A program made the position numbers and the translations under genes. A model generated the notes under the pieces. The model worked only from the letters and a program-made list of their open reading frames with translations, searched no databases and had not been told where the DNA came from. 64,000 nt of DNA from Pocillopora damicornis (taxonomy: Eukaryota): positions 558,001 through 622,000 of the forward strand of contig NW_020844266.1 in the NCBI RefSeq assembly GCF_003704095.1, given 5' to 3'. Below are positions 1 to 46,500 of the stretch, in pieces. Each line of letters opens with the position of its first letter. The stretch's first letter is position 1.

Positions 1-964
1 CCACGCGAACACCTCGTGATGTTTAGAGGAAGATTTTATCCACAACACTCAGTGTCAAAATTAAAAATTGTTTCTATGAAACAGCTTATTTTTTACGACA
101 CATTTTACAATGTTATTTGAGCATACCATGTTCACTAAGCTGAGAATAGACTATTTTACAGCCTTCTCCTGATTCATTTTGTTTGTTTGATCGTTCAAAA
201 CTTAAAATTTTATCTCGACAGAAGTGCAAAAAGGACTTGAGGTGGGTTGTTGAGGGGAAGTGGGGAGAAGGGGGGAGGGGGGGGGAAACAAACGCTTCGT
301 CTTCATCCACACCAGCCCCTCGTAAAACCAGCCTTGATCACTCCCAGAAGGAGGTGAGAGTTTTGGAACAAGTACTGCTCATAGGCTGACGAAGATTTCA
401 AACAATAGTTTGATAACGATCTTTAAACAACCTACACAGAAGGGCAGAGCGGTTCATGCGTGGAAAGAAGATTAACGATGATGACCTGTTGCCCCCTTAC
501 AGCAACGAATGCCGGTCTTCATGATGCTACAGGTGCAGTTGTTGTAATAGGATTCCCGAGTGTATTTCGCTGAAAAAGAAAATGATTTAGGATGGTTGCA
601 ACCCCTGGCAATTATGAATTGTGATCACTTACCCTTTTTTTTGGTTAAGATCTTTGAGGGTAAGGTGGTGGAAATGGCTTAAGCCGGGGGAAATAATCCC
701 GCTCCTTGTCTGAGTACCCGTACCCCAGGCACCTATCTTTCAATAAATGCCTTCCTTGTTGTGACCGCGCGAGAAATCTTTCAATGTGACGTGGAATAAC
801 ATAAAACTTCACTCAAGCTTACTGTATCTTTTCCGCGCCTGGCGAAAATTTGACTCGCAATGTCCTCTGGGAATGGCTTGTGGCTTCCAGGCCTCTTGAG
901 ACCCTTCGTCTTGCAAATCCAAGCACGATAAACCTATTTGCAGATTGACAAATCTGAAGCAATA

Positions 965-2502
965 ATGAAAGTTCGAGTTGCAGATGATCTTCCGATTGTG
1001 CCCCTTGGCAGTAGTGAGATACAGGGAAAGATTTTAGTTTCCCTTGAAGACGGAGTGGGATGTGCAATGTACGAATTTTACGCTCAAGCTGGCGACGAGG
1101 TCACGCTCATCGCATTTCACCGTAATCACAATCACATATACTACTGTGTTGAAGGTATGAGTAAATATTTCCATGCAACGAATGACTATCGCCCCTATGG
1201 CAAATTATATCAGTAGAGTGAAGACCTTGTCAAATGAAACCCTTAGCTTTCACACACACAAAAAACAAGATAAAACCCAAATTACTATATATCTACATAG
1301 GAGAATCATGCTACCGTGCCCTGCGTGTCGGAGCCTTCCTGAATTATTGATAGAATTATACCGCAAGACAGAAAACAGCATATTCGACTTTTTTAGTTAG
1401 CTGGTGCTAAGTATTTCCGTAGCGAAAATTGTGGCCGCCATCTTTTAATTAAATGGCGGTGAAAGACAGGGGAGAGAAGAAAATACGTACTAAGGGGGTA
1501 GTCATCGGTCAAGAATAAGGAGAGGCGCAGGGGTGGGGGAGTGAAGATTTTCGCCCTTCCCCCGGCCCCTACCCTCACCGTCCACTCTAACTCCAAATCA
1601 AACATGGCCCGTCGGATAAACGACTGCGAGTTTATATCGGTAGCTCGCTCTAATAGGACGCCTGTACCATCACGGGACGATAGAAGTCCATGGAGTATTG
1701 TTAGTGTGGTAAATTTGTAGTATTTGCGTCAATCATACACTCGAAGTTTTGTAGTTGAAAATAGGACCTGAAAAAAATTTAGGCCCGTACGGGATTTAAA
1801 CCCATGACCTCTGCGATACCGGTGCAGCGCGCTACCAACTGAGCTAACAAGCCAACTGGGATGTATATGAATATACAAATATATGAATTTCATATATCTA
1901 AAATCATAACTTTCATGTTGCTAAACACCTCATCCATTTTAACAGGGCGATGTGTCATACACGACGGTGCAACCAAACAGCTGCCTTTCACCGCTGACCA
2001 TCTCCTTGCTCTCACAACTGACAAAAACGTTCACATTCGTATTCAGGAGCCAATGAGAATAGTTGCTGTTTCCGTCCCACATGACACAAGCGTATCTCCC
2101 CCACCTTTGCTAATGAAGAGCCTGGACGAAGTAACTGATTCAGATCGCAATGTTCCCTTTGAAGATGGATTAAGTCGAAGGTTTCTTGCCGCCCCTGATG
2201 GCTACAACATCTCAGTTCACAACACGTTTTGTTCGAGTAGTTTTAGCAAGCATCTCCAATATCTAAATAACAAAGAATTAGTCTATGTTATCAAAGGTCA
2301 AGGTGAATACGTATGGGAAAACGGGCAATGTCGACACGATTTTGACTCTGAAAAGCATCATGGGACTATGTTTCTTGTAGGAAACAACGCCCACAAGATG
2401 ACAATCGGCGCTAGAGATACCATTGCTATCTGCCTGTTCTATCCACCACTCATGGGAAACGAACGGCTGAAAACTGGTAAAGAGGGTGGTTCCTCTTATT
2501 AG
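965..2502 (+). CDS. Tandem (two-domain) ectoine synthase EctC-like cupin protein, ~248 aa; exons 965-1154 and 1946-2502
   Basis: Phase-1 GT-AG intron (G|gtatga at 1155; tttaacag|GG at 1945) joins YCVE-G-RCVIH in frame (747 nt). Domain 2 (LMKSLDEVTDSDRNV...SRRFLAAPDGYNISVH...QYLNNKELVYVIKGQG...GTMF...AH...ICLFYPPLMGNE...SSY*) parallels the EctC consensus as I recall it (MIVRxLDEI..T.R.V..SRRLLL..DG.G.SFH..HYKNHLEAVYCIEGEG..GT.YAL..H..CVFNPPLTG.E..GSY). Domain 1 (MKVRVADDL...LVSLEDGVGCAMYE...NHNHIYYCVEG...MRIVAV) is a more diverged copy. An acceptor-like site at 943 allows an additional upstream exon. Confidence 0.8.
1720..1860 (-). mobile_element. tRNA-derived SINE inside the intron of the EctC-like gene
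   Basis: The reverse complement of 1781-1860 reads CCCAGTTGGCTTGTTAGCTCAGTTGGTAGCGCGCTGCACCGGTATCGCAGAGGTCATGGGTTTAAATCCCGTACGGGCCT. It has an A-box (TAGCTCAGTTGG) and a degenerate B-box (GGTTTAAATCC) but no proper acceptor stem, and is followed by a T-run and a non-tRNA body. Confidence 0.7.
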
Positions 2503-3149
2503 CTCCATGCTCTTTTCATACCTGCTAGCTAGTGTAGGCCTCAAGGGTTGATACGGTTTTAGCAACACACTTTTGTGAAACATCTGTATCATATTTGCCA
2601 TTATTTAACTTTGAAAGTGAAAATCGGGCTCTCGCGAATTATTCGGTAGGATTTCGGTAATTATTTGAAGTTCCCTGGCATTTTCCAAATATTTTTTAAA
2701 GGTTGCACAATCACGCAAGTCTTTAGGATGTCCTTGCTACAGGAATTGGACCACGTATATGCTAAGGAATGAGAAAGGTTTTCTGATGCGTTTATTTCGT
2801 AAATTAACCTATAGTTAATCATTAATCAAGTGGTAGTGTTGCCTTGAAGTCTGTTGAAGGCGAAATAAAATTTCTATACGATTACCTTGGACGGAATAGG
2901 AGGTCAGTTGTCTATAAACCGATCCAGCAGTGATGTTTATTATTCTTCGAGGCCTCTTGGTACGATAAATGACATGTTCTTTCACTTTGTGGTAATCGTC
3001 ACCCTTTGCTACAATGTGCGACTAGTATTTGACAAAGTGCAATGTTTTATTTTTTTTTAATTACAAAATGTGACGTGTTATTCAGCTTTTTTTTTATTGT
3101 TATTAAAAAAAAAATAAATTACTGTATGTTAGCGTGAGGAGTTGTATGT

Positions 3150-3395
3150 TCTACTACAAGACCTGAAGTTGTTTACAATTTGTTAAGAAAGCTAAAAACG
3201 AACAAAGCTACTGGACTAGACAATACTCCTGCACGCTTGCCTAAGGACGGAGTTCCGGTTATTTCGGAGTGCTTGACTCGCATAATTAACCGTTCCTATT
3301 TCTCTGGAGTGATACCAGCCGGCTGGAAGACTTCAAGAGTTGTGCCGTTATTCAAGTGCGGTAACAGGGAAGAAATGGATAAATATCGTGTGTGA
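3150..3395 (+). mobile_element. Short CR1/L2-type LINE reverse transcriptase fragment
   Basis: LRKLKTNKATGLDNTPARL...IPAGWKTSRVVPLFKCGNREEMDKYR matches the KAxGxD / W K xxxV xPxxK / YRP pre-RT region of non-LTR retrotransposons; truncated. Confidence 0.8.
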
Positions 3396-3889: not shown

Positions 3890-4461
3890 ATTAAGTGTGC
3901 GTGCATGAATCTAAGTGCCGGTCATGACCGCATCTGTCGATCCCTTCCCCTGTATTACAACAAGGAAACAACTCCTTGCTCGTCAGTCAGTCTGTCCAAA
4001 TTGTTCTCTCTGTAAAATTGCTCAATGACAATTACCCCTGAATCTGATCAACGGAACACACTCATAGTTTTGGGCAACTTCTTTAAGACACTGCCTAGCT
4101 CATACGTACCTGGAAACTGATCTTAATAATATTTTTAGAGCTACAAGAGCACGTCCTGTCATTTTCATTAAGTGTACGTGCATGAATCGACGTGCCGGTC
4201 ACGACCCCATCTGTCGATCCCTTCCCCTGTATTACAACGAGGAAACAACTCCTTGCTCGTCAGCCAGTCAGTCCAAATTGTTCTCTCTCTCTTGACTCCA
4301 TTCGATTTATACAATTACCAATGAATCTGATCAACGGGACACACTCAAAGTTTTGAGCAACTTCGTCAGTTATGACACTGTCTAACCCATACTTACCTTA
4401 AAACTGAGAAGATTATTAAAATAATCCTCTCAAAGCAGCAAGAGCACGTCCCGTCATTTTC
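3890..4461. repeat. Two-copy direct tandem duplication (units ~277 and ~295 bp)
   Basis: Units start attaagtgt(g/a)cgtgcatgaatc at 3890 and 4167, share catctgtcgatcccttcccctgtattacaac...tgaatctgatcaacgg, and both end caagagcacgtcc(t/c)gtcattttc. Confidence 0.9.
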
Positions 4462-4774: not shown

Positions 4775-4874
4775 NNNNNNNNNNNNNNNNNNNNNNNNNN
4801 NNNNNNNNNNNNNNNNNNNNNNNNNNNNNNNNNNNNNNNNNNNNNNNNNNNNNNNNNNNNNNNNNNNNNNNNNN
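4775..4874. other. Assembly gap (100 N)
   Basis: Run of N. Confidence 1.
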
Positions 4875-7807: not shown

Positions 7808-8302
7808 CCGAGATGCCGTTAAGAATTGCAGCGACATCGACTGGGTGTGCATTCCGTGTACCGCTCAAGTTCGTGATTTGTCTTTTGAACCTGCCGTCGA
7901 GAGCACGCGGCGGGATAGCTGGGAAGATGTTGGACGGAAAGACCAGTCCTTAAGAACTGTAGAAAGACTAATCAAGCCATCGCAAAGAAAGAGACACGTC
8001 ATCGGCACCAAGAAGAAAATAGAATTGGGCTGGAGAAGATGTAGTCGACGACACGAAATGGCCAGGAACAGTGACATGTTGCGGAACCATTTTTCCCCGC
8101 GCTGGTGCGTTTAAGTACCACGTAGAAAAAAAACACGTGAACTGTCGTCGATATCGTCTTGGGGCGGATTAGCAAGTTTTTGGTATACTGTTACCACTGC
8201 AGGCAAGTCATAAGCAATACAGTGGCTTCCCCACACTGTTTCAGTCACAGCAAAACAGCATTTCAGCACATCAGAAATGTCCATTTAGACAGAAAAACTT
8301 GA
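7808..8302 (+). pseudogene. Decayed zinc-finger-containing (probably transposon-derived) coding relic
   Basis: Fragments in shifting frames: RDAVKNCSDIDWVCIPC (PHD-finger-like end), TCCGTIF..GAFKYHVEKKH and VYCYHCRQ...TAFQHIRNVH (C2H2/BED-like), interrupted by stops and frameshifts. Confidence 0.35.
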
Positions 8303-9759
8303 GGAAAAACCTTTCTCAAATGCCAAAGTAAGTTAAAAATAGTGTCATCGATCAAAAATTGAAGTAAATGTATAAAGAAAATTCCTAGATATCGTAAACA
8401 CTGTTTGAGCCAAGCCAGGGACTACAGCCAGAGTCTACAAAAAAGTGGAAAACTTTGCATGGTCAGGAAAAGACGGAGTTAAAAAAACTTACAAAGAAAC
8501 AGAAGAAAACTGGTGGAAGATGGCCACAAAGATGCCATCAGCATTAATTGCATAACAGGCCCCCAAGCTTATTTTGTCAAAAAGTTGCCTTTTGGTATCT
8601 TTTTCAGTCATTAGTCACTTTGAACCATTTAGTTGAAACAAAATGTGGAGATTGTATGTTTCCATAAATCTAAGTCCAAAAATGTTAAATAGAGAAATCT
8701 AATTTGTGTATTATAATTGAAGATATGTTTTGTGGACATGTGAACAAATTAATGCACTTTTTGATCATTTATATGCATGAATGTCACCATAATATATGAT
8801 ATTAAACAATGTAATAACATATAATTATAAGATATAATTAATCAAAAATGATTGTGCAATAAAGTTTTGTGAGCTACTTTAATTAAATAAACATCAAGTG
8901 ATTGACTCATATCAGACCATGTGTAATGTACACTCTTTTTCCAGTGAAAATTTCTCATCATCTCTCACCATCTTGGAAGTGTTTTCAGCACCATGAGGTG
9001 GATGAAATATAGTGCATTATACATTATTGCAAATTTTCTTAATCAAATACACTACAAGAGCATAATAGTGCAATATCAAATACACATAAAAGTGATGTAA
9101 GAAATGTAAAAACAAAGAATCCATAGACTGAAAATAAAGAAAAAAAGAGAGAGTGTTGTTCTCTAAGGAAGTTATTGCTTGTCAGGTGCAACATCTCTTT
9201 CAAAACAATTAGCCAATCCAACGTCCTCCTCTGGAAACCAGATAGTAAATTGTGGGTGAGACAAACAAGTAAACAATGCTTTCCTGATTATTAAAATCTT
9301 GTTTGACAATGCCCCTAAGAGTGTTTTGATGGCATAACATTTTAGGAAAATATCAACTCAGAGTTTTAAAGCTGTGTTGTTGGTTGGAAGAAAAAAGAAA
9401 CAATATCCAACTAGAAGTCAATGTATACAATGCAATTTCTTACAGGTGGTTCAATGCAAAAACAAGATTTGTGCTTTTAAAAGTTACATGCTGCTCTGCA
9501 AACTTACATGTAATTAGCCTTGTATACAAGGAGGACCCCATAAAGCATCAACCAACAAAATTATATAGTAGATCAAGATACTAAAATGCACAGTCAGCCA
9601 AAAGGGCTTCATTTCCTTAGGTCTTGGGATTAAGTGATCATGCCCATGATTTATGGTACTGTGAATAATAAGGTCAATTACCCCTCTAAAATTCTCTTGT
9701 GAAGAAGTTACACAAAACTGGATGAAGAAGTCTTTAGGAACAACCTAGTTACTGCACCA

Positions 9760-12066
9760 TGGTATGTTATGGACATACTTGAATCTCTTGAAGAAAACTG
9801 TGATTATTGTTCTTGTCAACTACGTTACTGATGAACACATCCAGTAAAAAAAAAGTGTGCCATCTAAAGATGTCCCTTTCATGACCAAGAACTGGAAGAA
9901 AGCAATCAGGGACAAGAGAAAGGCAGCAAAAACATATGCAAACAACAGTACTGAGGAGAATGGGAAATGAAAAGGAAGACCAGAAATGCAGCTTCAAAAC
10001 AATGACACACTGCCATTAAAAAAAATTTCTTAACATAAAATCTGAGGAGTTGAACTATAAACCACAGGGATTCTTCAAAATGTTCAAACCTCTTCTGGCA
10101 AACAGAAATGGATCCTTTGGTAGCAATTGTATGTTATTGAATGTGAATGGAACTGTGGCTAAAGACCAAAACGTAGTTGTCAAAGAATTTGCTGGTTATT
10201 TTTCTACCTTGGCTAACAATATTGGTGATGAATCCAGCTTATCTTCAACAGAACACAATTTTACAGCCCCTCCAAGTGTAACAAACATTGAAAACAACTG
10301 GCCCACTGCTGATATGTTCACATTTACAGAGATCTCTTATGGTGAAACTGCTAAAGCCTTAGATGGTCTTAATCCCTCAAAGTCCACTTGTCCTGACTTA
10401 ATACCGCCAAGAATCTTGAAGCTAGCCGCAAAGGAACTTGCACTCTCACCAACAAAAATCTTTAATCTATCAATAACATCTGGGTGTTATCCCAAGAGAT
10501 GGAAGAGAGGGGATGGGGTACCTATTTTCAAGAAAGATGCCAAAATGGAGAAGGACTATTGGCCAGTGACAGTCTTAAATGCTTTAAACAAAAATCTTTC
10601 AACAGCTGCTAAGCAAGCAAGTAGTAACCAAAGTGGATTCGCATCTTTCCCGAAACATGTCAGCCTACAGAAAAGGTCACCACTGTCAGAGGACCTCAAT
10701 GAAACTCATAGAAGATTGGAGACTGGCCATTGACAAAGGAAAGTTTGTGAGAGTCATCCCTACTGACACTGGCAAAGCATTTGAGTTTCTCCTTCTATTG
10801 CACATGGTCAGGAAACTACAAGCCTATAATTTCTCTGATGAGTCTGTCACTATGTCTCTTAAGATCATATTTCCAAGACTAGTAAAGAAGGGTTAAGCTT
10901 GAAACAGTCAACAGCTCTTGGCACAATATAAGAAAAGGCTGCCCTCAAGGGTCATGTTTCAGACCATTGCTGTGGAACATGTTTCAGAATGACTTAAGTT
11001 ATAGTATTAAGAACAGTGATTTTTCTACATAGAAAAATGGCAACCTTTCAATCAGCTGATTGAAAGGTTGCCACCCTGTTAAACAACGAGGCTAAGATTG
11101 TATCCAACTGGTATAAAAATAATTTCTTGCTGGCAAACAAAGACAAATTCTAGGAAATGTCTCCAGCAAAAAAGCAAAGAATACACAAGAGGCACAGATT
11201 GTCATTGACAATGAAGAAATTGAATGCACAAGTTCATTAACGCCATGAGGAGTCCATATAGATATTAAACTTAGCTCTGGTGCACACATTCAAGAAGTCT
11301 GTCAGAAAGATAATTGCAAAATTGGTGTCCTCTTGAGAATGAAAAACCTAATTCCTGAAAAGAAGAAATTACATCTGCTTAAAGAGGTAATTCTCCCTTA
11401 GCTAAATTATTGCTCACTTGTTTTGCTATTCCTTAGAGCATCTGATCAGCAGAAACTAGAGAGGATAAAGGAAAAAGGGATTGAGAGTGGTTTTCAATTA
11501 CAGTGCATCAACATACAAAAACCTGTTAAAGAAAGCATGACCTGATGGTGTTGATGTTCAATGTTAAAAATGGACTGTCCAAAGTACATCCTTGAATTAT
11601 TCCAACAAAGGAGAGTAATTATAATTTACCAGCATCAGACCTTGTTATACTGATATATAATACAGTAACCTATGGAAAACATTCTATCAGATATCTAGGG
11701 CCTTATTTATGGCGCAAATTACTGGGAAATGTACAACACAGTGCAATTTGAACAGTTTTAAAAGACAAATTAAGAAGATGGACCTGGAAAATTTTTTGCT
11801 CTCAAGATGTCCCACTAGCTGTTTTTTTTTTGTCATTCTTAAAATATAATCCTACAACTCTATAACACAAAACTCTATATTTCTATTATTTATAATATTT
11901 CTATATTAGGTTTTTTCTGTTTTAATTCACACACATCTAAGAGTATATCTGTTATTTATGTTATGGTGTTCCCAATTAGCAACAACATACTTAAGTTACA
12001 TGACAATTGGAAAAAGTTTATTATCATCATCATCATCATCATCATCATCATCGTCATCGTCATCAT
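9760..12066 (+). mobile_element. Degenerate 5'-truncated CR1/L2-type LINE ending in an (ATC)n tail
   Basis: ORFs 10050-10733 and 10633-10896 (KSTCPDLIPPRILK, PKRWKRG..VPIFKK, SAYRKGH, DTGKAF) and GCPQGS (~10937) are RT motifs; many frameshifts and stops; 3' end runs into a trinucleotide repeat. Confidence 0.85.
12023..12066. repeat. (ATC)n microsatellite
   Basis: atcatcatc... run with a few gtc variants. Confidence 0.95.
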
Positions 12067-13627
12067 TAGGTTCTTCTGACAGGTTTGTCCATTAAAAAAT
12101 ACATGAATACAAACATGTACGATGCTCACCCAAGTGTAAAAATTATCTGAATATAAATCAACATGTAGATTACTTGCTATAAAATTTTCCATAAAGTTTA
12201 GGTAAGTGGTTAGCTTAAGCAGTACGCCATTTGCAAAGGGGAAAATTCTTGCCATGCCCTTTCACCCCTACATATTAAGTTTTTGGATCCGAAAATCCTC
12301 AAATTGAATAATATGATTCGTAAAAAACTGTAATTCCACATTTCAAATAGAAAGAGAATCATTTATAAAGCTAGATATCAAATAAAGATATCAATCCTTA
12401 ATAAATTTAAAACAAAACTAGCGCAGTGCTGGTTCCCGCCGTTGTGTGCCTTGCACTTCAGCGTCATTTCTCTGCTCTCAAGAAGCGGTTTAAACGAGAA
12501 TGCAGCGGTGTAAAAGGAATAGAAACGAGATACACACTTCCTGAAGTAATTAAAAGTGGTGTTGGAGCGAACAAAACAACTCAAACTTACCTAAATGAAG
12601 GAAGAAAGCAGAGTCTGATGCTCCGTGAGATGACAGGTAAACGAATTGCCGCAAAATACTGACGACGGCCCTATTCTCCTGGTCAGGTAAGCATATACCA
12701 TTTATACTGCGCTAGTACCCAGGGTCCCTCTCCTTTCAGAGCACAAATGCCACATGTTTATTCTTGGGCAACTATCGGGGAATGGTTTAGGGAGATTTTT
12801 AGGGGCTTCATGCAATACTGCCACAGCTAACGATAGGGAGTCAATCGATCGTGTAGTCTGATTTCTTAGGGAGGGAAGTCCCAATTATGCAGACGGGAGT
12901 AATCAACAAATTAAATTCGCCTTTAATCATTCAGAATTGCTCTGTTAACTTTTGCCAAGAGTCAGTTTTTGGCCACTGTTGCTTCCTCATACAATCATTG
13001 GTATCATTTAGAATTGGAAATTAGCTTTAAACATAACAGCCACTTCGATAAATCTATTCTCAACATATTTTCACCATGAAAAACTTTGGAAAATATATTT
13101 CTTCACACATACCATCTTACAACGATTAGGTTATGACACACCTATCTTGTTACATTTATAAGAGTGTGTTTGGAATGGGTAGGCAAACATCGTTTGGCTC
13201 ATTACACTCAGTACTTTTTACAATAACTGGATATGAGCTGGCACATCTCATTCGCAAATCGATGCCTCCTTTAAATAGATAACCTGATGGCATTTTTAGG
13301 TGGGAACATGCTTTAAGGTTACCTGGTACTCATATAACCATGGTTAGATGACACCCGTCCCTTGGGAAAAGACACCACTCAAGGTTTCACTACATTCTTA
13401 ATACTGAGGTGGAGCACTCTCCCTTAATTCTGCTACCCCCATAAACCTAACAATACACCTGAAGGTCAACTAGAGTAATGGCTTCGACTGCTAAACACAA
13501 ATACACGTTTTTCAACACTTTCTCAAGATCAAAACATGAAAAATTGAACCATTGATCGAAAAATAAATATAGCATTTATTACATAGTATTTCATATTTCT
13601 CTGCCGTAATATTTCCTCAATTAAGTC

Positions 13628-16600
13628 TCATCTGAACCTAATTAGTTCTTGAGTGGCAAATTTTCGCAAACTGTTAAACTCTACGTCCAAATGTTTCCTC
13701 CAAAAACGGCGATCACGACCCCAGACCTCGGCTGGATAACACGGGCTATCAATACCGTGAAATATTCGCGCAACAGCACGACCTGTAAAAGAGTGATCGT
13801 GGTGGACTCCTAGCAAGGCTCTAATATCACGTGCAATACCGTCCCAATTCACGTGATCTTCACGCGTGATACTGGAACGGATAACCCTTGAGGCTTTTCT
13901 GGCTTCTGCCAAAGTTGCAAGCTCCTCTTTTGTTTTGTCGTTGCAATCCTCAAAATAGCTTTTGACGATTCGTTTTAGCTGGTTATCAGCTTCATCGTCT
14001 ACGGCGTCAGCGCATTGCCAAAACTCCGAGAACGAAACGCTTTTCAGTGAGTCATAGACGAACTGGAGCTGTTGCAGTTGAGTTCTCTCTTCGGCCAGTA
14101 TGCGATCCTCGAGGAAATCGCAAATACTGTCACGCTCTGAGTCTGAGAGGTCCCCAGGCGCTCTAACATGTATGGACAAATCCGAGAACTCCACTAAGAT
14201 CCCGGATTGCCCCATGTTTGAAAGAGAATGTTCACGTGACAATGATGTGTTCCACTGAAGTGCTCTCAATTCACGACAAACTGGCGCCAGGTCCCAGCCC
14301 ATCTTGTCAGCCAACTCTACCACCGGGAAAGTTAATGTTCCTGATTTTTTGAAATTAGCAAGCGTTGTACTGGTGTGCGACACAGCAGCAGCAATTGGTG
14401 GAATTTTCTGCGCCACTTCCCTCAACTGTGCATGACCTCCGTAAAACTTCACCGTGCAGGTTGATTTGACGGGCTGCAGTACTTCTAGCCAGCGGGAAGG
14501 GTGCAACTCCAGGTAGCAGAGTAAAGTGGCAATGCTCTCTTCACGGAGGTCGAGCTCCTGAACAATGACATCTGTTACCATAGCGACCGGGTGACCACCA
14601 CATACACGATGAGCATTCACTTGATCAGCCGGCTGTAGATTATTGTCAGCGAATTCTGTGGATTTCGCGCTTGTATTGGATTCACTAGGAGGATTTGAGT
14701 CTAAAGTTCCTTTGACACTATTTTCAAGGCTGGGATGCTCGATATTGTTGTCTCCTAGAGGATCAATATCAGGCTCATCTAACTTCAGATTTAATTCACT
14801 TCCTTCTTCTCTTTCTATTTTTTGCCTCTCATCAGTATCCTCCCGCACTTCCAGCTCCCTCTGGTACTTTTGCTCAAAAGCTTGTAATTCAGCCTCCATG
14901 TTAGTATCTATGATGTTGTCATAATCTCCTTCTAGATCCAAATAGTCATTAGAATCACTCTTTACAGCAACCTGCTGCCGTTCTTTTTGTTGTCTCTGAA
15001 GTTCTCTACAATCACAACGTGGAAATGTCCTTTGGACCAGCTTCTTAAGAGAAGAGCGGTCCACTGTGTTGGCGTAAACGTGCCGACGAAGTTCGCACAT
15101 GTCTTTACCCTGTTGATTAAAGATAGGTTAAGACACAAATAGGTACAACCAAGTTATAAAAGTCCATTGCAGCTCCTACATCTTGCAAGCCCGAGGCTTC
15201 AGGCGACAAAAGTAACATTTTCTTCGGCCAGGCTCGTGATTACAGAAATAAGGCCCTTTAAGAACTTTGAGTCCAAAGACAAACACCACCCTTATAATAA
15301 AAGACGAGCAAAGACACTGGAAATTGATGTTAACTGGTAAAACAACACTCTGAGACAGATGGTTAACCGTCTGTCCAAGTGTTCAATTCCACGCTCTACT
15401 CACCTCGGGATCCAAAAACACGTGACAGTGCGACGGATTCCCGTCCCGTCCCGCACGGCCAATCTCCTGCACATAACTCTCAAAGCTGCGCGGTAAGTTA
15501 TAATGGATTATAGCTCGAACATCTGATTTATCCAGACCCATGCCAAATGCTACAGTCGCCACCACAATACGCAGCTGACCTGTCATGAAGCGCTTCTGGA
15601 CACGACGTCTTTGGGCGGCAGATAGTCCGGCATGGTAGCATTCGGCATCCCATTTGGGGACGGTCGCTTTGGCTGTCTTCTTCTTGCGTTTTCTAGGGTA
15701 AAGAAAATGCATGCCTGTTTGTAAAAAAAGATATCCTTACAAAGCCTTGAAAAGTTAACTCCACAAGCTACATAATTTGGAATTGACCACGAACCTTTGA
15801 AAGTACCTTTGAAAACCAAAAGTACGGTCCAAAACCAATAACAACGATTGATGGAAAAACCGTGTCAGTACCTATCGTTTCTTGTGGACACACTCCTTAA
15901 TTTCAACTGCAGAAGAAAAATCCTCACCCTTTGGATTTCGTTTTGGTCTTCCCAGGCTCCTCTGCATCTCCTTCGTCTACTGATTCTTCCAAGCCATTCC
16001 AGCCGGAAGCCAGCCTGGTGCTCTGTAAGCACGTGCGTAAGGTCGACGCCAGCTTCTCGGTCTGTTCTCGTCTAGTGCAGTAGATTATAATTGAATCACA
16101 GTGTAAAAAGCGGCGGCCTTGAAGCAACTGCAACAATGCCTGGAGGAATGCACATTAAGGGTCAAGAACGAACTCATGAGAAATCGAAGTAAAAGCACAC
16201 AACTGACTTTCAGGGCGGGCAAAAAGGAATAATCAAGTCACGATTGATTCTAGTCATGCAATCTTAGTGGTTGAGATGACAGACTAAGCCATCTAACACA
16301 ATGAGAGATCGCAGTCAAGAAAAACCAATGTAATTCTGGATCACTTCTAAAACAAAACTGGAAGAAGCTTTATCACTCTTTGGCATTCTTGGCTCCCATG
16401 CACGTTTGTAAATCATGTATTTGAGCTGTTTGTTTTTAGAAAAAATTCTCGGACATGGGGGGAGGGGGGATACACTTAAACGTCCACATTTAGCCCTTGA
16501 TTGACATGGCACACGCCTATTGAAGACTTCCTTTCAAGTCTTGGGTAAAAAAATGAAAGCAATTATTCTCTCTAAAAAAAAAGTTGATCAGAAACTCGAT

Positions 16601-25977: not shown

Positions 25978-26952
25978 TTATGTGTATACAGAAGGTGGTC
26001 GCATCAATTCATCCAACACCTGGGCTAACTGGGCGCTCTTGTAGCTACCCTCACTTCTCTTTTCCTTCTCTGCTGCTGATTCGTTCCTTCTGGATGAGAT
26101 TTGCTCGTTGCTTTTGCCCCTGTGCGCATTTTCTTTTACACTGCCACCACTGAGATTGCGAGAGGCACCAGTTACCAAGCCTTCAGCGTACCACTTGACA
26201 GGTTCAGACCCCGTGCCTTTTTTTTCACCTGATCGAAGAAAGAAATCTCTCTTTTGGATATTGGGGTCAACTCTCTCCCTTCTTGCGGTCCGTGTTGGTA
26301 AAATGACCCCTGAGACATCAGGAATACATTCATGCCACACCTTTAGATACTTAGACGAGCTCGGAACACTCTGAAAGAATGGCGCACTTGCCTGCACATC
26401 GCAATGTTGTTGTTTTGCGCAGCGTTTCCTTATTTGGTCGGTCACATGACTTGGATCTGGGACATTTGTGTTAGGTGTAGAGGTAGATGAATCGGCAGGT
26501 GCAGAGCTGGTGCATGTCACAGAGTTACCCTTTCCCCACCGAGCTTGAGTTACTTTCACTCGTTTGCCAGGACTGCATTGTAATAACGCACGGTCGCCAA
26601 CACACATGACGGTCACGTTCTGCGAAGTCAGGTCAACAAAACTGTTATTTCTCCCACTCTTTAAAAATTTTCCGTTTTGGTTCTTTAAGAATAGACACTA
26701 GTTTATACAATTAAGCTGCCAGAGAACTTCAATTCAGTGATAAAATGGGAGTTCGGGTGCAACGTGGTCGGCACAATTTTCCAATCGAACGCTGATAAAC
26801 TTTTCATAAATTAATCTTCACCAGAATTCCCTAGACGGCTATTCACTACTGTGTTCTTAGAAACTTTATGTCTGTCATCTTAACAGCAATGCAAATATTT
26901 CGTACGTTACTGCTATATGTGAATAGAAGTACCTTAAGTGACTAAAGGGGAA

Positions 26953-33313: not shown

Positions 33314-36300
33314 ATGACAAATCATCTGGGAGCGCAGTCTTTGACCGAAGATAACCAAGTGGTTTCAATTGAGTTACCAAATGGATCAACAGAAAAGATT
33401 GAAGTTCGCGATAAACGGAATGCGACTGTCAGGGACTTAAAGGTCACCTGTGAGTTGCAATTTGGTATCCCATGTAATCTACAGCAAGTCAGCGCTTTGA
33501 AAAACCCAAACCAGGAGTTAAACGACTGGATGCCCCTCACAGAAGCTATTCAGATGATGGGGAATGATGCTGTCGTTGTCGTTAAAGTACCTGTGTGGTG
33601 GAACAAGTTTATTTGCGTTTGCTTGAACAATGATATCGAGAACGTTTGCATAAGAACTAAGCTTCCTATGCAACAGATCAGTAAAGAGGAGCGATTGTTT
33701 GTCGCTTTTTACATCGCTTGCTGCGGTGGACATGAAAAATTACTGGAGCGGCTCCAAACTATGGACATTCAGTGCGACCATCAAACAACTACTCGAGCGG
33801 GTAGGAATCTTTTTCACGCTGCTGCAGCAAGTGGAAAGGTAAACTGTGTGGAGTTTGTGGCCAAACATTTGATCAAACCATCAAAGGAGAACTTAACACT
33901 AATAGACATTAATAGAGAGACCCCGATTGATATTGCGCGACGATTAAATTATAGCGAGACGGAAAGATTACTTTATAAATACATGTACAATGAAAAGGGC
34001 GAACGAATGGAACGCAATTCCGCCGAGTCTGGAATAGATTTGAGCGAAGAAAGCGAGTCAGAGGACTCTGTGGAAGAAAAAAACCGATCAAGAGGAAACA
34101 TTTCCGTATGCGAAGGACAAGATGATGGTGACAGCAGAAGTGCAGATGTGATTAAACCAATTTGTGTCAAGGACGAAGAATTAGTGATCACCGAGTGTGA
34201 CGAAGGATTGAGTTTTGCTGTGAACTCGAAATCAGAACAGGTGACGCCCCCAAATTCACATGTTGGAGTGAATCAACAAGATGGCTTGGCAACGTGTGAG
34301 AGGAGCCCTCAACAAGCGCACAGTCCATGTTCTTCAGAAAGTTCTGACGAGTCGTCGTATATTTCCCCCAGGCCGAGTAGACCGCAAACCCTTAATGTGC
34401 AATCCAATCAACACTTGCTCCAACGGCGGTTTAAGGAAACCGATCCTTACAGGCCAAAGAGCGCGCGAACTGTGCGCTGTCCGAAAATCTACCTCGAGGA
34501 AGAGGAAGAAGCTGATGTAAATGAAAATCATCTGCCTCCTTTAGAAGGCCGAACACAGAAACCTCATGCCCTTGGAAACGTCCTGAGCTCATCCGCGTCT
34601 AACCTGCAAATTAGGAGAATGAAACAAGCTCTTGTACGAACTAACAGCGGGCCGAATTCTCCCATGTTGAATCGACGATTGAATCCGACGGAAGAGTCAC
34701 CTACCGATGATTTTGTCTCGAAAAGCGCGCCAGGTTCTCCACAGAGTCCACGATTGTTGTTCAAGCCATCGCGCAGTACCGCTCCGGTTTCGCCAAAATT
34801 TTCAAGAGCACTGCTGGATCGAAGACGCGGCTCTGAGCCGGTAGCAGCTATGAACAAGATGAATGGTGTCAGGTTTCCTCGCACGACCATTACAGCTGAT
34901 CTGCACGGAGACATCAAGGGACAACCTGCCTCTCCTATAATGTTCAGAAGAGGCAAGGCAAGGTAGGTACATACTCGTTAACTATCAATATATAAGTGGC
35001 CTCTGCCTTTCTTTATTGACCCTTTTCCAAATTGGAATTGTTGTACAGTCTCACAATCAAAGTACGAGGATGTGAACATTGCCATCCTTTAGAATGACCG
35101 ACTATATAGCTTAACAGAACAAGCTCAGTTTCCATGACTTGCAACACAGTGACTTTAATTTGTTACCTTCGCACGCTCTATAGCGTCTGCGAAGTTCTTA
35201 TCCGGACTTACTGCTGCTTCATAAATATTAATAGTTTGGCAAGTAAACAAACTCTTGCTTGTGCAATATGTCTAAAGATTATGTGTTGCCGATTGTGAAA
35301 TCTACACGAACGCAATTAAGAGAAAACAGTTATTTTTCTTTAAAAACTTTGCATGGTCGAAGAGCTTAAAAATAAAAATAAAGTTGAGAGATGTCGTAAC
35401 TTTTAATCAGTTGTAAGTTGAAACTGGTTGTGTGGAGCCACTCTACGTGACGTTTTTGGTTTCATGTATATAACACCAGTTGACCTTAACTTCTCCGCTG
35501 TCAAGAACTTTTTTCCACGAACGTGCTCTTTTGATTTAGCATATTCAAATGAATAAGAGGAAACCAGTTTATTAACATAGAGATTGATAAACGCAAAAGA
35601 ACAGAGCGTTTAAGGTTGTAATTTCGATTACACGTTCACATAATCAGTTTTATTGAAAAAACAATTCATAAGTTAATTTAACCAAACTATGTTTTAAATC
35701 GTGTAACTGGTTACATTTAAAGCTTTTCCGTTGTGTTTTGGAGTTTTCCTTAAGTGATGTTTTAATTTAACTTCTATAATTTGCCGTTGGTACTTGAAAC
35801 AACACGACCTACGATTGTAAACAAATACCAGAGCTCTATAATAAACTTATCGAGCCAGCTTTCCATTTTTTTCCCCGTTCAAAAATGCTTTTGTTGAACA
35901 AGCTATGATAGTTTTAGTTTTAAATACCTGTTTTTCTTTTATGAGGAAAAACCTTAGAGAGTTTTCTTTTCAGTCTGATGATTTGTTTTCTCTGTAATTC
36001 ACGAGTGTGAGACTATTTATCTGGACTCGTTCCTAATTAAATTTTGTGATCTCTCAAAGCACCCTATGACGACCTTTACCTACGTTTAGACCACAAATAA
36101 GTGGTTTCATTTTCACCCACAAATCGTTGTAACACAAACAAGTCAAGAATTCAAGATCTTCTTAAGTACGAATGGATCCTTGTAAACAGTTTTGATTCGA
36201 AAACGTGATTATTGATTTCATAAACGAACACAAATAATCCTATGTTCCAGTTGAAAGAACCTGAATGAACTCAAACAGATTGAAATATTGGATGTGTTAT

Positions 36301-43534: not shown

Positions 43535-46500
43535 ATGGTTTGCTCCAAAGTAGGCAGCCATGACCAGATGAACAACATGAACGACGACACAAACGGTGAT
43601 AACTTTGGTAGAAGCAGAGTTATTGACATTTTAACACCAGAGGGAAAGACACTGAAGATGCACATACAAGACAGCACAACGGTAGGATGTATAAAGATTG
43701 ACTGCGAACTTCTCTGCGGAATCCCATCCGACTTACAACTTGTAAAACTTCAAGACAAGGAGCTGGGCAACGATGAAACTATTGACATTTCGGACGGGTG
43801 CACTTTGAAAGTAACCGTTCAACAATGGTGGCAGAAATTCATTTCAGCGTGTTACAAAGGAGACACAAAACAAGTCAGAAAAAGAGCTTTGGTGAAAATG
43901 AGTCAGATTTCGCGCGAAGAGCGGAACTTCACTGCGGCATTCATCGGGGCAGTGAAGGGGAACCACAATTTAATGTTTGCAACGTGTGCAGGAAGGAATA
44001 TGAATCTTCGCACCAAAACTAAATTGAGTGGTAGAAATCTTCTCCATGCTGCAGTGTCCGGCGGGAGCAAAAGCTGCGTAGCGAATATTTTCATGAACGG
44101 AGGCAACGCTTTGCTAGAGGTACCGGATAACACGGGAGAAACACCAATAAAAATGGCGGAGAAATTATACGGCGATTCTGGCGAACTTGTGAACTTTTTA
44201 AACGTTTATCTTGAACTCCATCGGCGCGATGCAAAATGTTCTGGTTCGTCTAATAGCTTTTGGGACAACTTCGAGCGAAACAATGACAGCTCAGGTGGAA
44301 TTAGCGCTGATGATAAGTTTGATAATAGTGATAATAGCCGGCCACAATTTAATGAAAACATGGACAGTCAGTTGGGGGATCTGTCTTCAGACTCTGACGA
44401 ACGAACAGAGGAGAAAAAAACGACAAACTACACCGAAACAAGATTTTGTAATAACAACTCAGCCACCCCGTTGACGAAAGTAAACATTGTGGACTATGAC
44501 GCCACCGTGGGTCAAAACTCGTCACACGTCAGATTGGACGGTTTCTCAAACTCTGACAATGAACAGATTGGTGCAAACTTCAAAAACGAAGGCTCCAGCG
44601 AGCAATGTTATATACCCAAGAGTGATACGGGATATTACAGTGGTAACAATGAAAGTATACGAAAAGATACAACTCATGTCACGGAGATGCTTTGGAATGA
44701 GCATTTGTTTACACAAGCGAACACACCTCTAGTGGGATCAACAACAGGCCACGAGCTTAGTTTAGCACACAGTCGTTCAGGAGACGACAAAGAAGTTAAT
44801 AGTATGTCATTACTCTCCGCTGACCCAACCTATGCTGACTCTAATGAATCAGACAGGAGAGCTCAGCCCCGAAATCAGGGTATCGAGGAGCAAAGGAGAA
44901 AACGGACAACAACGGAGAGGCCGAATTTAGAAATGCTTTTGTCGATGAGTTCCGAAAACAGTGCCTCGCCGGTTCTTTCGGCTAGCCCTGAAAACGAACC
45001 ACACAATAGCGAAAGTGTCGTGAACGAGTCACGTGACGATCAGCAGGCCAACGAAGAAAACAAGAACGAGCCACATGACAAACAATGTTGTGCGAACACG
45101 GAGAGCGAGGTCGTTAATGCAAGGAACGACAAAGCTACCTTGCCCACGGCCACATCTTCTGAAAAGTGCAACATCGTTACTTCTCATTCTCCGAAGCCCC
45201 TCCGAAGAGCCCAACTGAGAAAAAAGTCTATCGTGGAGCAGCAGAGGAGGCGTCGATCCATGGCTGGAAGACCGAACCTGGAGGAACTTATCCGAAAACG
45301 CGAAGAGGAATCTGAGCAGGAGAACGCCTCGGAGATAGGCAAAGAGGAAGGCTCTGGTGCAATGGATTCAAACGAGACAGGACCAGTTGCTTTGGTCATC
45401 ACGACAGAAGATTCTAGTAGTCTAAAATGTAAAGAAAAATCAAATGATGCAGACTTTAAGGATGAAGGATTAATCACAATAAAAAATATGGAGAAAGAAA
45501 ACACTGGTTATGAATCGAAGGAAAAAAATTTTTCTGCTATAGACTATCAAGGAGAGGAGTCTCCTGTTTCAGCCAGGTACGTTCTGCAAATGTGGCAAAA
45601 CCAGGCCCTAGAAAATGCGTCAGGAGACGAAACGGACACAACCTGCTCCCCAAAAACGCCAAGGAGAGCCCTTCTCAGAAAACAGGTGTTCATGGAACAA
45701 AGAAGGAAACGATCCGCCACCGAAAGACCGAATCTTATCAAGCGTCTGGATCCTCACAAGAAAGATGACGATGGAGATGAAAAACTCGGCCATGAAGAAA
45801 TAGAAATTATTCGCCATGGCAAAGGCCAGGAAAAAACGAATAAAGACAGCAAAAACAATGACTTGGTTTTTCCAGTCGACCAAGGAGGAGCTCTCGAGTC
45901 AGACTTTTCATCTGCTAATTCAGGCGAGAGTGCATCAACGAAAGAACAAAATGTGGAATCTAAGAAAGCACCGACAAACCCACCATTAACAGGAACATCA
46001 CAAAAAAGGGTTCCGATAAGGGTCACACACAGACGCTCCAATGTTGGCCATTTACTGGAAGCTCGTGCCAGGAAGGACCTAAGAAGCAACTGGTCATATC
46101 TTAGTGGTGACGAATCTGACGTAAGCGAGACCGAACAGAAAGTAGTTGACGAAACGGTGATGAACATTAGAACTTCCTCAAAAATGCAAAGAAGAAGACG
46201 CCTACCAATGGTTCCAAACAAAACTATGAAACTACCTCTCATTAAAATAGAAGACAGTGGCACTTCTACTGGCTCGGACCCAGGGGATACTCACGTGCCC
46301 AAGCGAAGTCAGGTGCACTATTCTGGGTCTGTGGGTGGTGATGAGAAATCATTCGTTCTGAATGACAATTTCAAGGTTCCCTGTCCTTCTGTTGGCCGAT
46401 CCCGTTCAGGTTCAATGTGTAGTGAGGATTCAGCATCATCTGAGGAGATGCTCGGAGAGAGAAGCAGGCAAGTAAAGTATTTCGAATTAACCATTGTTTA

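What the first reader, a model, noticed from the sequence alone, without database searches (positions are those of the whole stretch)
965..2502. Intron-containing, tandem-duplicated ectoine-synthase (EctC)-like gene in an animal genome
Seen: a clean two-exon ORF whose two halves each resemble EctC, with a spliceosomal GT-AG intron carrying a host-type SINE, on a scaffold otherwise full of metazoan genes. Established: EctC is a cupin enzyme that cyclises N-gamma-acetyl-diaminobutyrate to the osmolyte ectoine. It is typically prokaryotic and encoded with ectA/ectB, though solitary 'orphan' EctC-type proteins of unclear substrate exist. Inference: a domesticated, probably horizontally acquired enzyme giving this (coral) host an undescribed small-molecule cyclisation or osmolyte step, possibly on a precursor supplied by symbionts since no ectA/ectB is in the window.
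Basis: partly seen in the sequence, partly recalled or inferred. Interest (0 to 1): 0.85.

Follow-up and report, generated by a model that had tools for sequence, protein, structure and literature searches.

The report
Coral two-domain ectoine-synthase-like gene
A stony coral carries and expresses a spliced gene for a protein made of two fused ectoine-synthase-like barrels. The gene belongs to a barely studied family already annotated in other marine invertebrates and some marine bacteria, so it is real but not a coral novelty, and its chemistry is unknown.

Summary
The gene has two exons (CDS 965-1154 and 1946-2502) and a GT-AG intron that carries a high-copy tRNA-derived SINE. RNA contigs from at least three studies confirm the splice. 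It lies on gap-free host DNA beside an animal GPCR gene, and the intron position and this neighbour are conserved in two other coral genomes.

Both halves are EctC-type cupins. The C-terminal half passes Pfam Ectoine_synth and folds like EctC crystal structures. The N-terminal half is recognisable only by profile comparison and has lost the EctC metal and substrate residues.

It is not a canonical ectoine synthase:
- It scores below NCBIfam's cut-off.
- The Tyr iron ligand is Phe and Trp-21 is Gly.
- The genome has no EctA, and its best EctB match is weak, far below that family's cut-off.

The 250-aa two-domain architecture is not a coral invention. It occurs in annelid, amphioxus, hemichordate and starfish proteins, and in marine Alpha- and Gammaproteobacteria, where it sits in siderophore-like gene clusters. 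EctC-like genes in animals were reported in 2016.

Verdict: a new member of a known but uncharacterised family, of moderate interest. The scan also noted this same stretch once before.

The parts
917..1154 (+). Exon 1: 5' UTR (transcript contigs reach at least 917, some to 850 or further upstream) plus CDS 965-1154. It encodes the first 63 residues and one base of the N-terminal degenerate EctC-like cupin.
   Evidence: L003 aligns to 917-1155. RNA contigs cover 850-1155.
1155..1945 (+). Spliceosomal GT-AG intron of 791 nt, phase 1, inside the codon for Gly64. The position is conserved in two other coral genomes.
   Evidence: The joint is seen in X1, X11 and X5 and in L003. The same exon boundary, at residue 64, is found in L036 and L037.
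1751..1861 (-). tRNA-derived SINE copy inside the intron, with a tRNA-Thr-like core at 1781-1853. It is a high-copy repeat of the host genome.
   Evidence: ARAGORN. At least 1446 candidate copies; those scored are mostly 93-97% identical. Read depth is in the thousands.
1946..2097 (+). First part of exon 2: the rest of the N-terminal EctC-like cupin and the short linker.
   Evidence: Family alignment and domain split. AlphaFold model of the orthologue P0002.
2098..2502 (+). C-terminal EctC-type cupin, the probable catalytic domain, with the stop codon at 2500-2502. It ends in the family's conserved Ser-Ser-Tyr tail.
   Evidence: Pfam Ectoine_synth 57.9 bits. PDB sequence hits are EctC, apart from one marginal unrelated hit at E 0.021. 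The domain model has pLDDT 90.1 and best matches EctC structures at rmsd 1.3-1.6 A. Residue table.
2503..3126 (+). 3' UTR. Transcript contigs end between about 3072 and 3126.
   Evidence: L003 aligns to 3126. Contigs of X11, X5 and X6 end at 3072-3085, one followed by adapter sequence.

Best explanation
This is a single-copy, host-encoded, expressed coral gene for a 248-residue bicupin built from two EctC-type (ectoine-synthase-family) barrels.

**How it probably works.**
- The C-terminal barrel is the probable active site. It keeps two of EctC's three iron ligands (Glu-57 and His-92 equivalents) and the residues that hold the amino-acid end of the substrate (Ser-23, Arg-24/25, Thr-40, Tyr-52, Phe-106).
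- It has lost the Tyr-84 ligand (Phe here; never Tyr in the coral clade) and Trp-21 (Gly).
- The N-terminal barrel has lost the metal triad and the substrate residues. It most likely plays the role that the second subunit plays in the head-to-tail EctC homodimer, giving a single-chain pseudo-dimer with one active site.
- Inferred: it is a metal-dependent enzyme that cyclo-dehydrates, or in reverse hydrolyses, an N-acylated diamino-acid-like compound other than the standard EctA product. It does not work within an ectoine pathway.

**Origin.** The fused gene is older than corals. The same architecture occurs in other marine invertebrates and in marine proteobacteria. The coral intron and its SINE came later.
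For: **Gene, splicing and host residence:**

**Copy number and pathway:** one PF06339 locus; no EctA; best EctB match far below its cut-off; no IucA/IucC.

**Both halves are EctC-type:**
- N-domain profile against canonical single-domain EctC: 99.1%, E 4.8e-19.
- C-domain profile against the same: 100%, E 1.3e-46.
- N against C: 93.3%.

**Structure:**
- The C-domain model of the window's own sequence best matches the EctC crystal structures 5onm, 5ono, 5by5 and 5bxx (E 6e-10 to 6e-9, rmsd 1.3-1.6 A over 116-120 columns). The next cupins are about 10^4 worse in E-value.
- The full-length model of P0002 has pLDDT 93.3 and pTM 0.91, with two equivalent barrels. Its best whole-chain matches are bicupins at Z 22-24.

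**Residues:** per-position tables, set against the catalytic-core definition in PMC6344544.

**Selection:** dN/dS 0.28 and 0.22 against two other coral transcripts.

**Family range:**

**Tree:** bacterial bicupins (100/99), corals (100/99) and single-domain EctC (99/91) are separate supported groups.
Against: - No activity, metal content or substrate was measured.
- Losing the Tyr-84 ligand may abolish metal binding. An Ala mutant of bacterial EctC keeps only about 15% activity (PMC6344544).
- The pseudo-dimer role of the N-domain is inferred from residue loss and the bicupin model. It was not compared in coordinates with the EctC dimer.
- The N-domain keeps a conserved His at the Glu-57 position and a conserved Tyr at the Asn-38 position, so a second ligand site is not excluded.
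- The backbone of the tree is unresolved, so the donor, the direction and the number of transfers are unknown.
- Full-length statements rest on the 96%-identical orthologue P0002, not on the window's own joined protein.
Confidence: 0.6

Rival explanations
1. It is a working ectoine synthase that makes ectoine in coral cells from N-gamma-acetyl-diaminobutyrate supplied by bacteria or algal symbionts.
For: The Pfam Ectoine_synth match and the EctC-like fold of the C-domain. Glu-57, His-92, Ser-23, Arg-25, Thr-40 and Tyr-52 equivalents are kept. The absence of EctA and of a real EctB means any substrate would have to come from outside.
Against: P0002 scores 81.5 bits against NCBIfam's 128-bit cut-off, while canonical EctC proteins score 156-198. 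The Tyr-84 iron ligand is Phe and the substrate contact Trp-21 is Gly. No report of host-made ectoine in corals turned up in the paper searches.
Confidence: 0.1
2. It runs the reaction backwards. It would be a hydrolase that opens ectoine-type cyclic amidines taken up from food or from the microbiome, as a nitrogen or carbon source or to remove them.
For: The gene stands alone without any synthesis partner. From established knowledge, EctC chemistry is a reversible water elimination. The family is confined to marine invertebrates that live among ectoine producers.
Against: There is no direct evidence. Known ectoine breakdown uses unrelated enzymes. The altered metal site applies here as well.
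Confidence: 0.12
3. It is no longer an enzyme, but a small-molecule-binding or structural bicupin.
For: One of the three metal ligands is lost in the whole coral clade. His-55 is Asn and Trp-51 is Gln. The N-domain is fully degenerate. Some relatives (P0054, P0057, Glandiceps) have also lost the Glu-57 or His-92 equivalent.
Against: Glu-57, His-92, Ser-23, Arg-24/25, Thr-40, Tyr-52, Cys-104 and Phe-106 equivalents are nearly invariant across about 90 C-domains. dN/dS is 0.22-0.28.
Confidence: 0.13
4. It is bacterial contamination or a mis-assembled contig, not a coral gene.
For: EctC is typically prokaryotic. An assembly gap lies 2.3 kb downstream, at 4775-4874.
Against: - It has a spliced GT-AG intron that holds a host SINE with at least 1446 candidate genomic copies.
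- It appears in polyA RNA.
- The 20 kb upstream is gap-free and carries an animal GPCR gene.
- The same intron position and the orthologous GPCR neighbour occur on contigs of more than 1 Mb in two other corals.
Confidence: 0.01

Closest known systems
Canonical ectoine synthase EctC (EC 4.2.1.108; structures 5ONM and 5BXX)
   Same: It is in the same Pfam family, PF06339. The C-domain has the same fold (rmsd 1.3-1.6 A, 26-27% identity). It keeps the Glu and His iron ligands, the Ser-Arg-Arg, Thr and Tyr substrate contacts, and the Phe of the C-terminal lid.
   Different: It is one chain of two barrels rather than a 130-aa homodimer. Tyr-84 is Phe, Trp-21 is Gly, Trp-51 is Gln and His-55 is Asn. 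It scores below NCBIfam's cut-off. The genome has no ectA or ectB. It is eukaryotic and contains an intron.
Animal 'L-ectoine synthase-like' proteins (Saccoglossus NP_001171779, Branchiostoma XP_066293572, Acanthaster XP_022086707, Owenia CAH1799958, Glandiceps XP_077997351)
   Same: They share the roughly 250-aa two-domain architecture, align end to end at 25-36% identity, have the same degenerate N-domain with a conserved His at the Glu-57 position, and mostly end in the same Ser-(Ser)-Tyr motif at or near the C-terminus.
   Different: Intron positions are not shared: Owenia and Saccoglossus have none, and amphioxus has two at other positions. Echinoderm and hemichordate proteins keep Tyr-84, whereas corals never do.
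Bacterial two-domain EctC-like proteins (Mesorhizobium WP_210168689, Stappia spp., Granulosicoccaceae)
   Same: They share the fused architecture, the Ser-Ser-Tyr tail, Gly at the Trp-21 position and Phe at the Tyr-84 position. Identity to the coral protein is about 27%.
   Different: They are encoded inside biosynthetic clusters: Lys/Orn N-monooxygenase, an IucA/IucC synthetase, a WelO5-like 2OG oxygenase and an MFS exporter. No IucA/IucC was found in the coral genome, and a single-protein search found no homologue of the partner oxygenase. They also just reach NCBIfam's cut-off, at 129.5 bits.
Solitary ('orphan') bacterial EctC-type proteins
   Same: They stand alone without ectA or ectB, and their function is unresolved (Czech et al. 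2018).
   Different: The orphans are single-domain. The coral protein groups with the bicupins, outside the supported single-domain clade.
(S)-ureidoglycine aminohydrolase and DUF861 bicupins (4E2Q, 1SFN, 1RC6)
   Same: They are the best whole-chain structural matches (Z 22-24, 218 residues aligned at 2.4 A). From my own knowledge, they have one metal site, in the C-terminal barrel only.
   Different: Identity is only 13% and there is no family-level sequence match. The resemblance lies in the bicupin arrangement, not in family membership.

Membership tests
Ectoine synthase EctC (canonical enzyme) | Match to Pfam PF06339 above the gathering score | tested here: met
   Window exon 2 scores 57.9 bits against a cut-off of 27. 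The orthologue P0002 scores 71.6 bits.
Ectoine synthase EctC (canonical enzyme) | Score above NCBIfam NF009806's curated cut-off of 128 bits | tested here: not met
   P0002 scores 81.5, P0003 80.2 and P0014 79.0 bits. Nine single-domain EctC proteins score 156-198 bits.
Ectoine synthase EctC (canonical enzyme) | Iron-binding triad Glu-57, Tyr-84, His-92 (PMC6344544) | tested here: not met
   In the C-domain, Glu and His are kept but Tyr-84 is Phe. The coral clade has F, L, I or V at this position, never Y. In the N-domain the three positions are His, Leu and Val.
Ectoine synthase EctC (canonical enzyme) | Substrate contacts Trp-21, Arg-25, Asn-38, Thr-40, Tyr-52 | tested here: inconclusive
   Arg-25, Thr-40 and Tyr-52 are kept. 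Trp-21 is Gly. Asn-38 is His, but His is also common there in canonical proteins.
Ectoine synthase EctC (canonical enzyme) | Encoded with, or in a genome that has, ectA and ectB | tested here: not met
   No EctA match. The best EctB match is 37 bits against a cut-off of 552. Neither lies in the window.
Ectoine synthase EctC (canonical enzyme) | Single cupin of about 130 aa that forms a head-to-tail homodimer | tested here: not met
   It is a 248-aa chain with two barrels.
Ectoine synthase EctC (canonical enzyme) | EctC-type three-dimensional fold | tested here: met
   The window's C-domain model (pLDDT 90.1) has EctC structures as its eight best PDB matches, with TM 0.77-0.93 and rmsd 1.3-1.6 A for most.
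Ectoine synthase EctC (canonical enzyme) | Converts N-gamma-acetyl-L-2,4-diaminobutyrate to ectoine | not testable with these tools
   This needs an enzyme assay.
Two-domain EctC-like proteins of marine invertebrates ('L-ectoine synthase-like') | End-to-end alignment of a roughly 250-aa protein with both barrels | tested here: met
   phmmer gives single stretches covering residues 1-248 for the Owenia, Branchiostoma, Saccoglossus and Acanthaster proteins, with E 1e-24 to 1e-35. Alignment.
Two-domain EctC-like proteins of marine invertebrates ('L-ectoine synthase-like') | Degenerate N-domain (no Ser-Arg-Arg; His at the Glu-57 position) together with a conserved C-domain core and a Ser-Tyr C-terminal motif | tested here: met
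Bicupins of the ureidoglycine aminohydrolase / DUF861 type | Sequence-family membership | tested here: not met
   No Pfam match to those families. Only 13% identity despite Z 22-24.

The most novel reading that the evidence does not exclude
The two-domain EctC-like proteins are a distinct enzyme class that makes or opens a cyclic amidine or hydroxamate-type ring in a metal-chelating or protective small molecule. Marine invertebrates, this coral included, would then use a bacterial-origin copy to produce or process such a compound themselves. The lead is the bacterial relatives, which sit in conserved siderophore-like clusters next to an N-hydroxylating monooxygenase, an IucA/IucC synthetase and a 2OG oxygenase.
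Probability: 0.12. Interest if true: 0.8.

Novelty: new member of a known kind. Interest (0 to 1): 0.45.

Why it matters
If characterised, this family would add an enzyme of probable bacterial ancestry to the metabolism of corals and several other marine invertebrate phyla. That bears on osmolyte or metal-handling chemistry in the coral holobiont.

The report gives a bench study four practical starting points:
- a verified gene model;
- a clear assignment of which barrel is likely to be active;
- the specific residues that differ from true ectoine synthase;
- a bacterial genomic context (siderophore-like clusters in Stappia and Mesorhizobium) that offers a tractable way to find the family's substrate.

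It also corrects the impression that this is a coral-specific novelty.

Tried and rejected
**Ideas tested and dropped**
- Ligand swap. I proposed that a His at the Asn-38 position replaces the lost Tyr-84 ligand. This is rejected: 19 sequences in the table, nearly all single-domain, carry both His and Tyr.
- Contamination or mis-assembly. Rejected.

**Searches that gave nothing**
- Pfam on exon 1 alone: no hit.
- Searches of the coral genome for EctA, IucA/IucC, the bacterial partner oxygenase and EctD found nothing. The EctD search rang in no control genome, so it shows nothing. Lys/Orn-monooxygenase hits were weak and non-specific, since 12 of 14 controls rang.
- ESM Atlas returned only generic bacterial cupin clusters.
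- Five paper searches found no functional study of the animal proteins and no paper with both 'ectoine synthase' and 'bicupin'.

**Inconclusive or failed steps**
- The search for related loci with a 13-sequence alignment failed for lack of a conserved stretch. A 3-sequence bacterial alignment worked.
- The Acanthaster locus is not on record.
- Downstream synteny was not found. The collagen/CTHRC1 genes that lie beyond the gene in L036 and L037 are not in the window.
- Shared intron positions between corals and bilaterians were not found.
- The tree backbone is unresolved, so I name no donor.

Exons were searched by reference, and the natural transcript product P0002 stood in for the full length.
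- The N runs at 4775-4874 and 61415-61514 were left untouched.
Full report
**1. Is the gene there?**

Yes. The sequence has an ATG at 965, a GT donor at 1155 and an AG acceptor at 1944-1945. The open frame runs to a stop at 2500-2502, giving 190 + 557 nt, or 248 codons plus the stop. The intron is phase 1 and lies inside a Gly codon.

Contigs of public RNA runs laid on 850-3200 show one joint that skips 1155-1945 with GT..AG ends. It appears in a polyA library (X1), a cDNA library of another study (X11) and a third run (X5). In X11 a single 1486-nt contig covers 850-1152 and 1944-3072. Run X6 also carries contigs that run into the intron, so it holds unspliced RNA or DNA.

Independently, a 1426-nt contig from SRR15101688 (L003) aligns to 917-1155 and 1944-3126 at 98-99% identity. 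It carries an uninterrupted 248-codon frame whose product is P0002. P0002 is 96% identical to the exon-2 product, differs at one of the 63 exon-1 residues, and reads straight across the predicted junction.

**2. Is it the animal's own gene?**

Yes, on four lines of evidence.
- The intron holds a tRNA-Thr-like element at 1781-1853 on the minus strand. The 111 nt around it have at least 1446 candidate copies on many scaffolds of this 234-Mb, 4393-contig assembly; those scored are mostly 93-97% identical.
- The window begins 558 kb into a 722-kb scaffold. The 20 kb upstream has no gap and encodes a rhodopsin-family GPCR at 100 bits.
- Two other coral-like assemblies carry orthologues at 58% and 66% identity across exon 2, on contigs of 1.03 and 1.20 Mb. 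In both, the exon boundary falls at the same residue 64, and the orthologous GPCR (66% and 72% identical) lies upstream on the same strand.
- dN/dS against two other coral transcripts is 0.28 and 0.22.

The assembly size and contig count recall a published pocilloporid assembly. That is my memory, not a test.

**3. What are the two halves?**

*C-terminal half.* The exon-2 product matches Pfam Ectoine_synth at 57.9 bits, cut-off 27, over residues 56-172. Its only significant solved-structure relatives are ectoine synthases, at E 2e-8 to 2e-7. A model of the window's own C-terminal 134 residues (pLDDT 90.1) has EctC crystal structures as its eight best PDB matches. Most align at rmsd 1.3-1.6 A over 116-120 columns with 26-27% identity. 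Their E-values are about four orders of magnitude better than the next cupins.

*N-terminal half.* Exon 1 alone matches nothing. The natural full-length product P0002 gives two Ectoine_synth stretches. With 22 full-length family members split at the linker:
- the N-domain profile matches a profile of single-domain EctC proteins at 99.1% probability, E 4.8e-19, over 107 of 112 columns;
- the C-domain profile matches at 100%, E 1.3e-46;
- N against C gives 93.3%.

Nine of those single-domain proteins score 156-198 bits on NCBIfam's ectoine-synthase model, above its cut-off of 128, so they are canonical-type.

*Whole chain.* The full-length model of P0002 has pLDDT 93.3 and pTM 0.91 and shows two barrels with the same strand order. 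Its best whole-chain matches are bicupins: DR1152, ureidoglycine aminohydrolase, EF2996 and YlbA, at Z 22-24 with 218 residues aligned at 2.4-2.7 A and 13% identity.

**4. Active-site reading**

Czech et al. 2019 (PMC6344544) define the EctC core as follows:
- substrate contacts Trp-21, Arg-25, Asn-38, Thr-40 and Tyr-52;
- product contacts that include Ser-23 and Phe-106.

| EctC position | Coral C-domain | Coral N-domain |
|---|---|---|
| Trp-21 | Gly | Ile |
| Ser-23, Arg-24, Arg-25 | kept | Gly-Lys-x |
| Thr-40 | kept | Phe |
| Trp-51 | Gln | Ile |
| Tyr-52 | kept | Ala |
| His-55 | Asn | His |
| Glu-57 | kept | His |
| Tyr-84 | Phe | Leu |
| His-92 | kept | Val |
| Cys-104, Phe-106 | kept | Ala, Ser |

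Across about 119 aligned C-type domains, the Glu, His, Ser-Arg-Arg, Thr, Tyr and Phe positions are nearly invariant. The Tyr-84 position is Y only in some lineages, such as the hemichordate and the starfish, and is never Y in the coral clade.

The N-domain therefore has no EctC-type site. Only a conserved His at the Glu-57 position and a conserved Tyr at the Asn-38 position remain.

My own idea that a His at position 38 replaces the lost Tyr failed. In one search's table, 19 sequences carry both residues, and nearly all of them are single-domain.

**5. Pathway context**

- The genome has one PF06339 locus.
- It has no EctA match.
- Its best EctB match is a generic aminotransferase at 37 bits against a cut-off of 552.
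- P0002 scores 81.5 bits on NCBIfam's ectoine-synthase model, below the cut-off.

So this is not a canonical ectoine synthase within an ectoine pathway.

**6. The family**

A full scan of 1.84 billion representative proteins found 101 relatives. Many are about 250 aa long and align end to end. The named ones are:
- Owenia fusiformis (annelid);
- Branchiostoma lanceolatum;
- Saccoglossus kowalevskii and Glandiceps talaboti (hemichordates);
- Acanthaster planci (starfish).

Source databases mostly label these 'L-ectoine synthase(-like)'.

The literature already covers part of this. Harding et al. 2016 reported ectC-related genes in Branchiostoma and Saccoglossus (PMC4987115). Czech et al. 2018 repeated it (PMC5924519). 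A 2024 comparison listed PF06339 among domains found in Seriatopora and Favites but not in Acropora or Montipora (PMC11639872). No paper in the library discusses the two-domain architecture.

Introns are not shared across phyla. The Owenia and Saccoglossus genes are intronless, and amphioxus has two introns at other positions. This is what one would expect of an originally intronless gene that gained introns lineage by lineage. It is not proof of that history.

**7. Bacterial cousins**

The same fused architecture, with the same Ser-Ser-Tyr C-terminus, occurs in Mesorhizobium, eight Stappia genomes, a Hyphomicrobiales MAG and a Granulosicoccaceae MAG.

In the Alphaproteobacteria the gene heads a conserved block: bicupin, Lys/Orn N-monooxygenase, IucA/IucC synthetase, WelO5-like 2OG oxygenase, and an MFS transporter on the opposite strand.

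In the gammaproteobacterium it lies among a B12-radical-SAM enzyme, an acyl-CoA dehydrogenase, an adenylating enzyme, a dihydroxy-acid-dehydratase-like protein and the same type of 2OG oxygenase.

These are specialised-metabolite contexts, and the first is siderophore-like. No IucA/IucC was found in the coral genome, and that oxygenase was not found with a single-protein query.

**8. Tree**

I built a careful maximum-likelihood tree of 64 C-type domains. Three groups are supported:
- single-domain EctC proteins (99/91);
- bacterial bicupins (100/99);
- the coral clade (100/99).

The branches joining the animal groups and the bacterial bicupins are unresolved. The fusion therefore predates the coral lineage and is shared with bacteria. 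Donor, direction and number of transfers cannot be stated.

**9. Verdict**

It is not a coral novelty and probably not a true ectoine synthase.

The most likely mechanism is a metal-dependent cyclo-dehydration or ring-opening of an N-acyl diamino-acid-type compound in the C-terminal barrel, with the N-terminal barrel acting as a built-in partner subunit. The anatomy is shown here. The chemistry is inferred.

Noticed in passing
L004 8001-15063; L012-L021 (about 8001-15000 in each): In Mesorhizobium, eight Stappia genomes and a Hyphomicrobiales MAG, the two-domain EctC-like gene heads a conserved block. The block contains a Lys/Orn N-monooxygenase, an IucA/IucC synthetase, a WelO5-like 2OG oxygenase and an MFS transporter. 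This looks like an undescribed siderophore-type cluster.
   Followed up: partly
L020 2930-11695: In a Granulosicoccaceae MAG the bicupin has different neighbours: a B12-radical-SAM enzyme, an acyl-CoA dehydrogenase, an AMP-binding enzyme and an ILVD-like dehydratase. It still has the same WelO5-like oxygenase, which is the one constant partner.
   Followed up: partly
L036 8386-8577 and L035 93-809: A transcript from another coral (P0014, 238 aa) uses a donor site 33 nt further upstream in exon 1. It therefore lacks 11 residues, including the strand with the conserved His and Tyr-Tyr-Cys of the N-domain. This may be an alternative isoform.
   Followed up: partly
P0018 and P0023: Two different EctC-like products are recorded on one 826,962-nt contig of a coral-like assembly, so some corals may carry two copies. 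This genome has one.
   Followed up: no
P0045: A 972-residue predicted protein on a 13.9-kb ENA contig matches the query in 14 separate stretches. It may be an array of repeated EctC-like units or a read-through of tandem copies.
   Followed up: no
window 3180-3395 (+): A short ORF just past the 3' UTR resembles the N-terminal part of a retrotransposon reverse transcriptase by eye. Pfam gave no match at E 0.001.
   Followed up: partly
window 3893-4130 and 4172-4420: Two adjacent copies of a repeat of about 240 nt lie between the gene and the assembly gap. A loose contig end at 2263 in run X6 continues into the same repeat, so the repeat is dispersed.
   Followed up: no
L032 6798-7616 and 9597-9998 (scaffold 554798-557998, just upstream of the window): A rhodopsin-family GPCR gene lies directly upstream on the same strand. 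Its orthologue keeps this position in two other coral genomes.
   Followed up: yes
window 25981-26616 (-), 33314-34963 (+), 51419-53182 (+): There is an ORF with a SUEL-type lectin domain and two long paralogous-looking ORFs with ankyrin repeats. Several other long ORFs (13631-15100, 43535-46504) have no Pfam match.
   Followed up: partly
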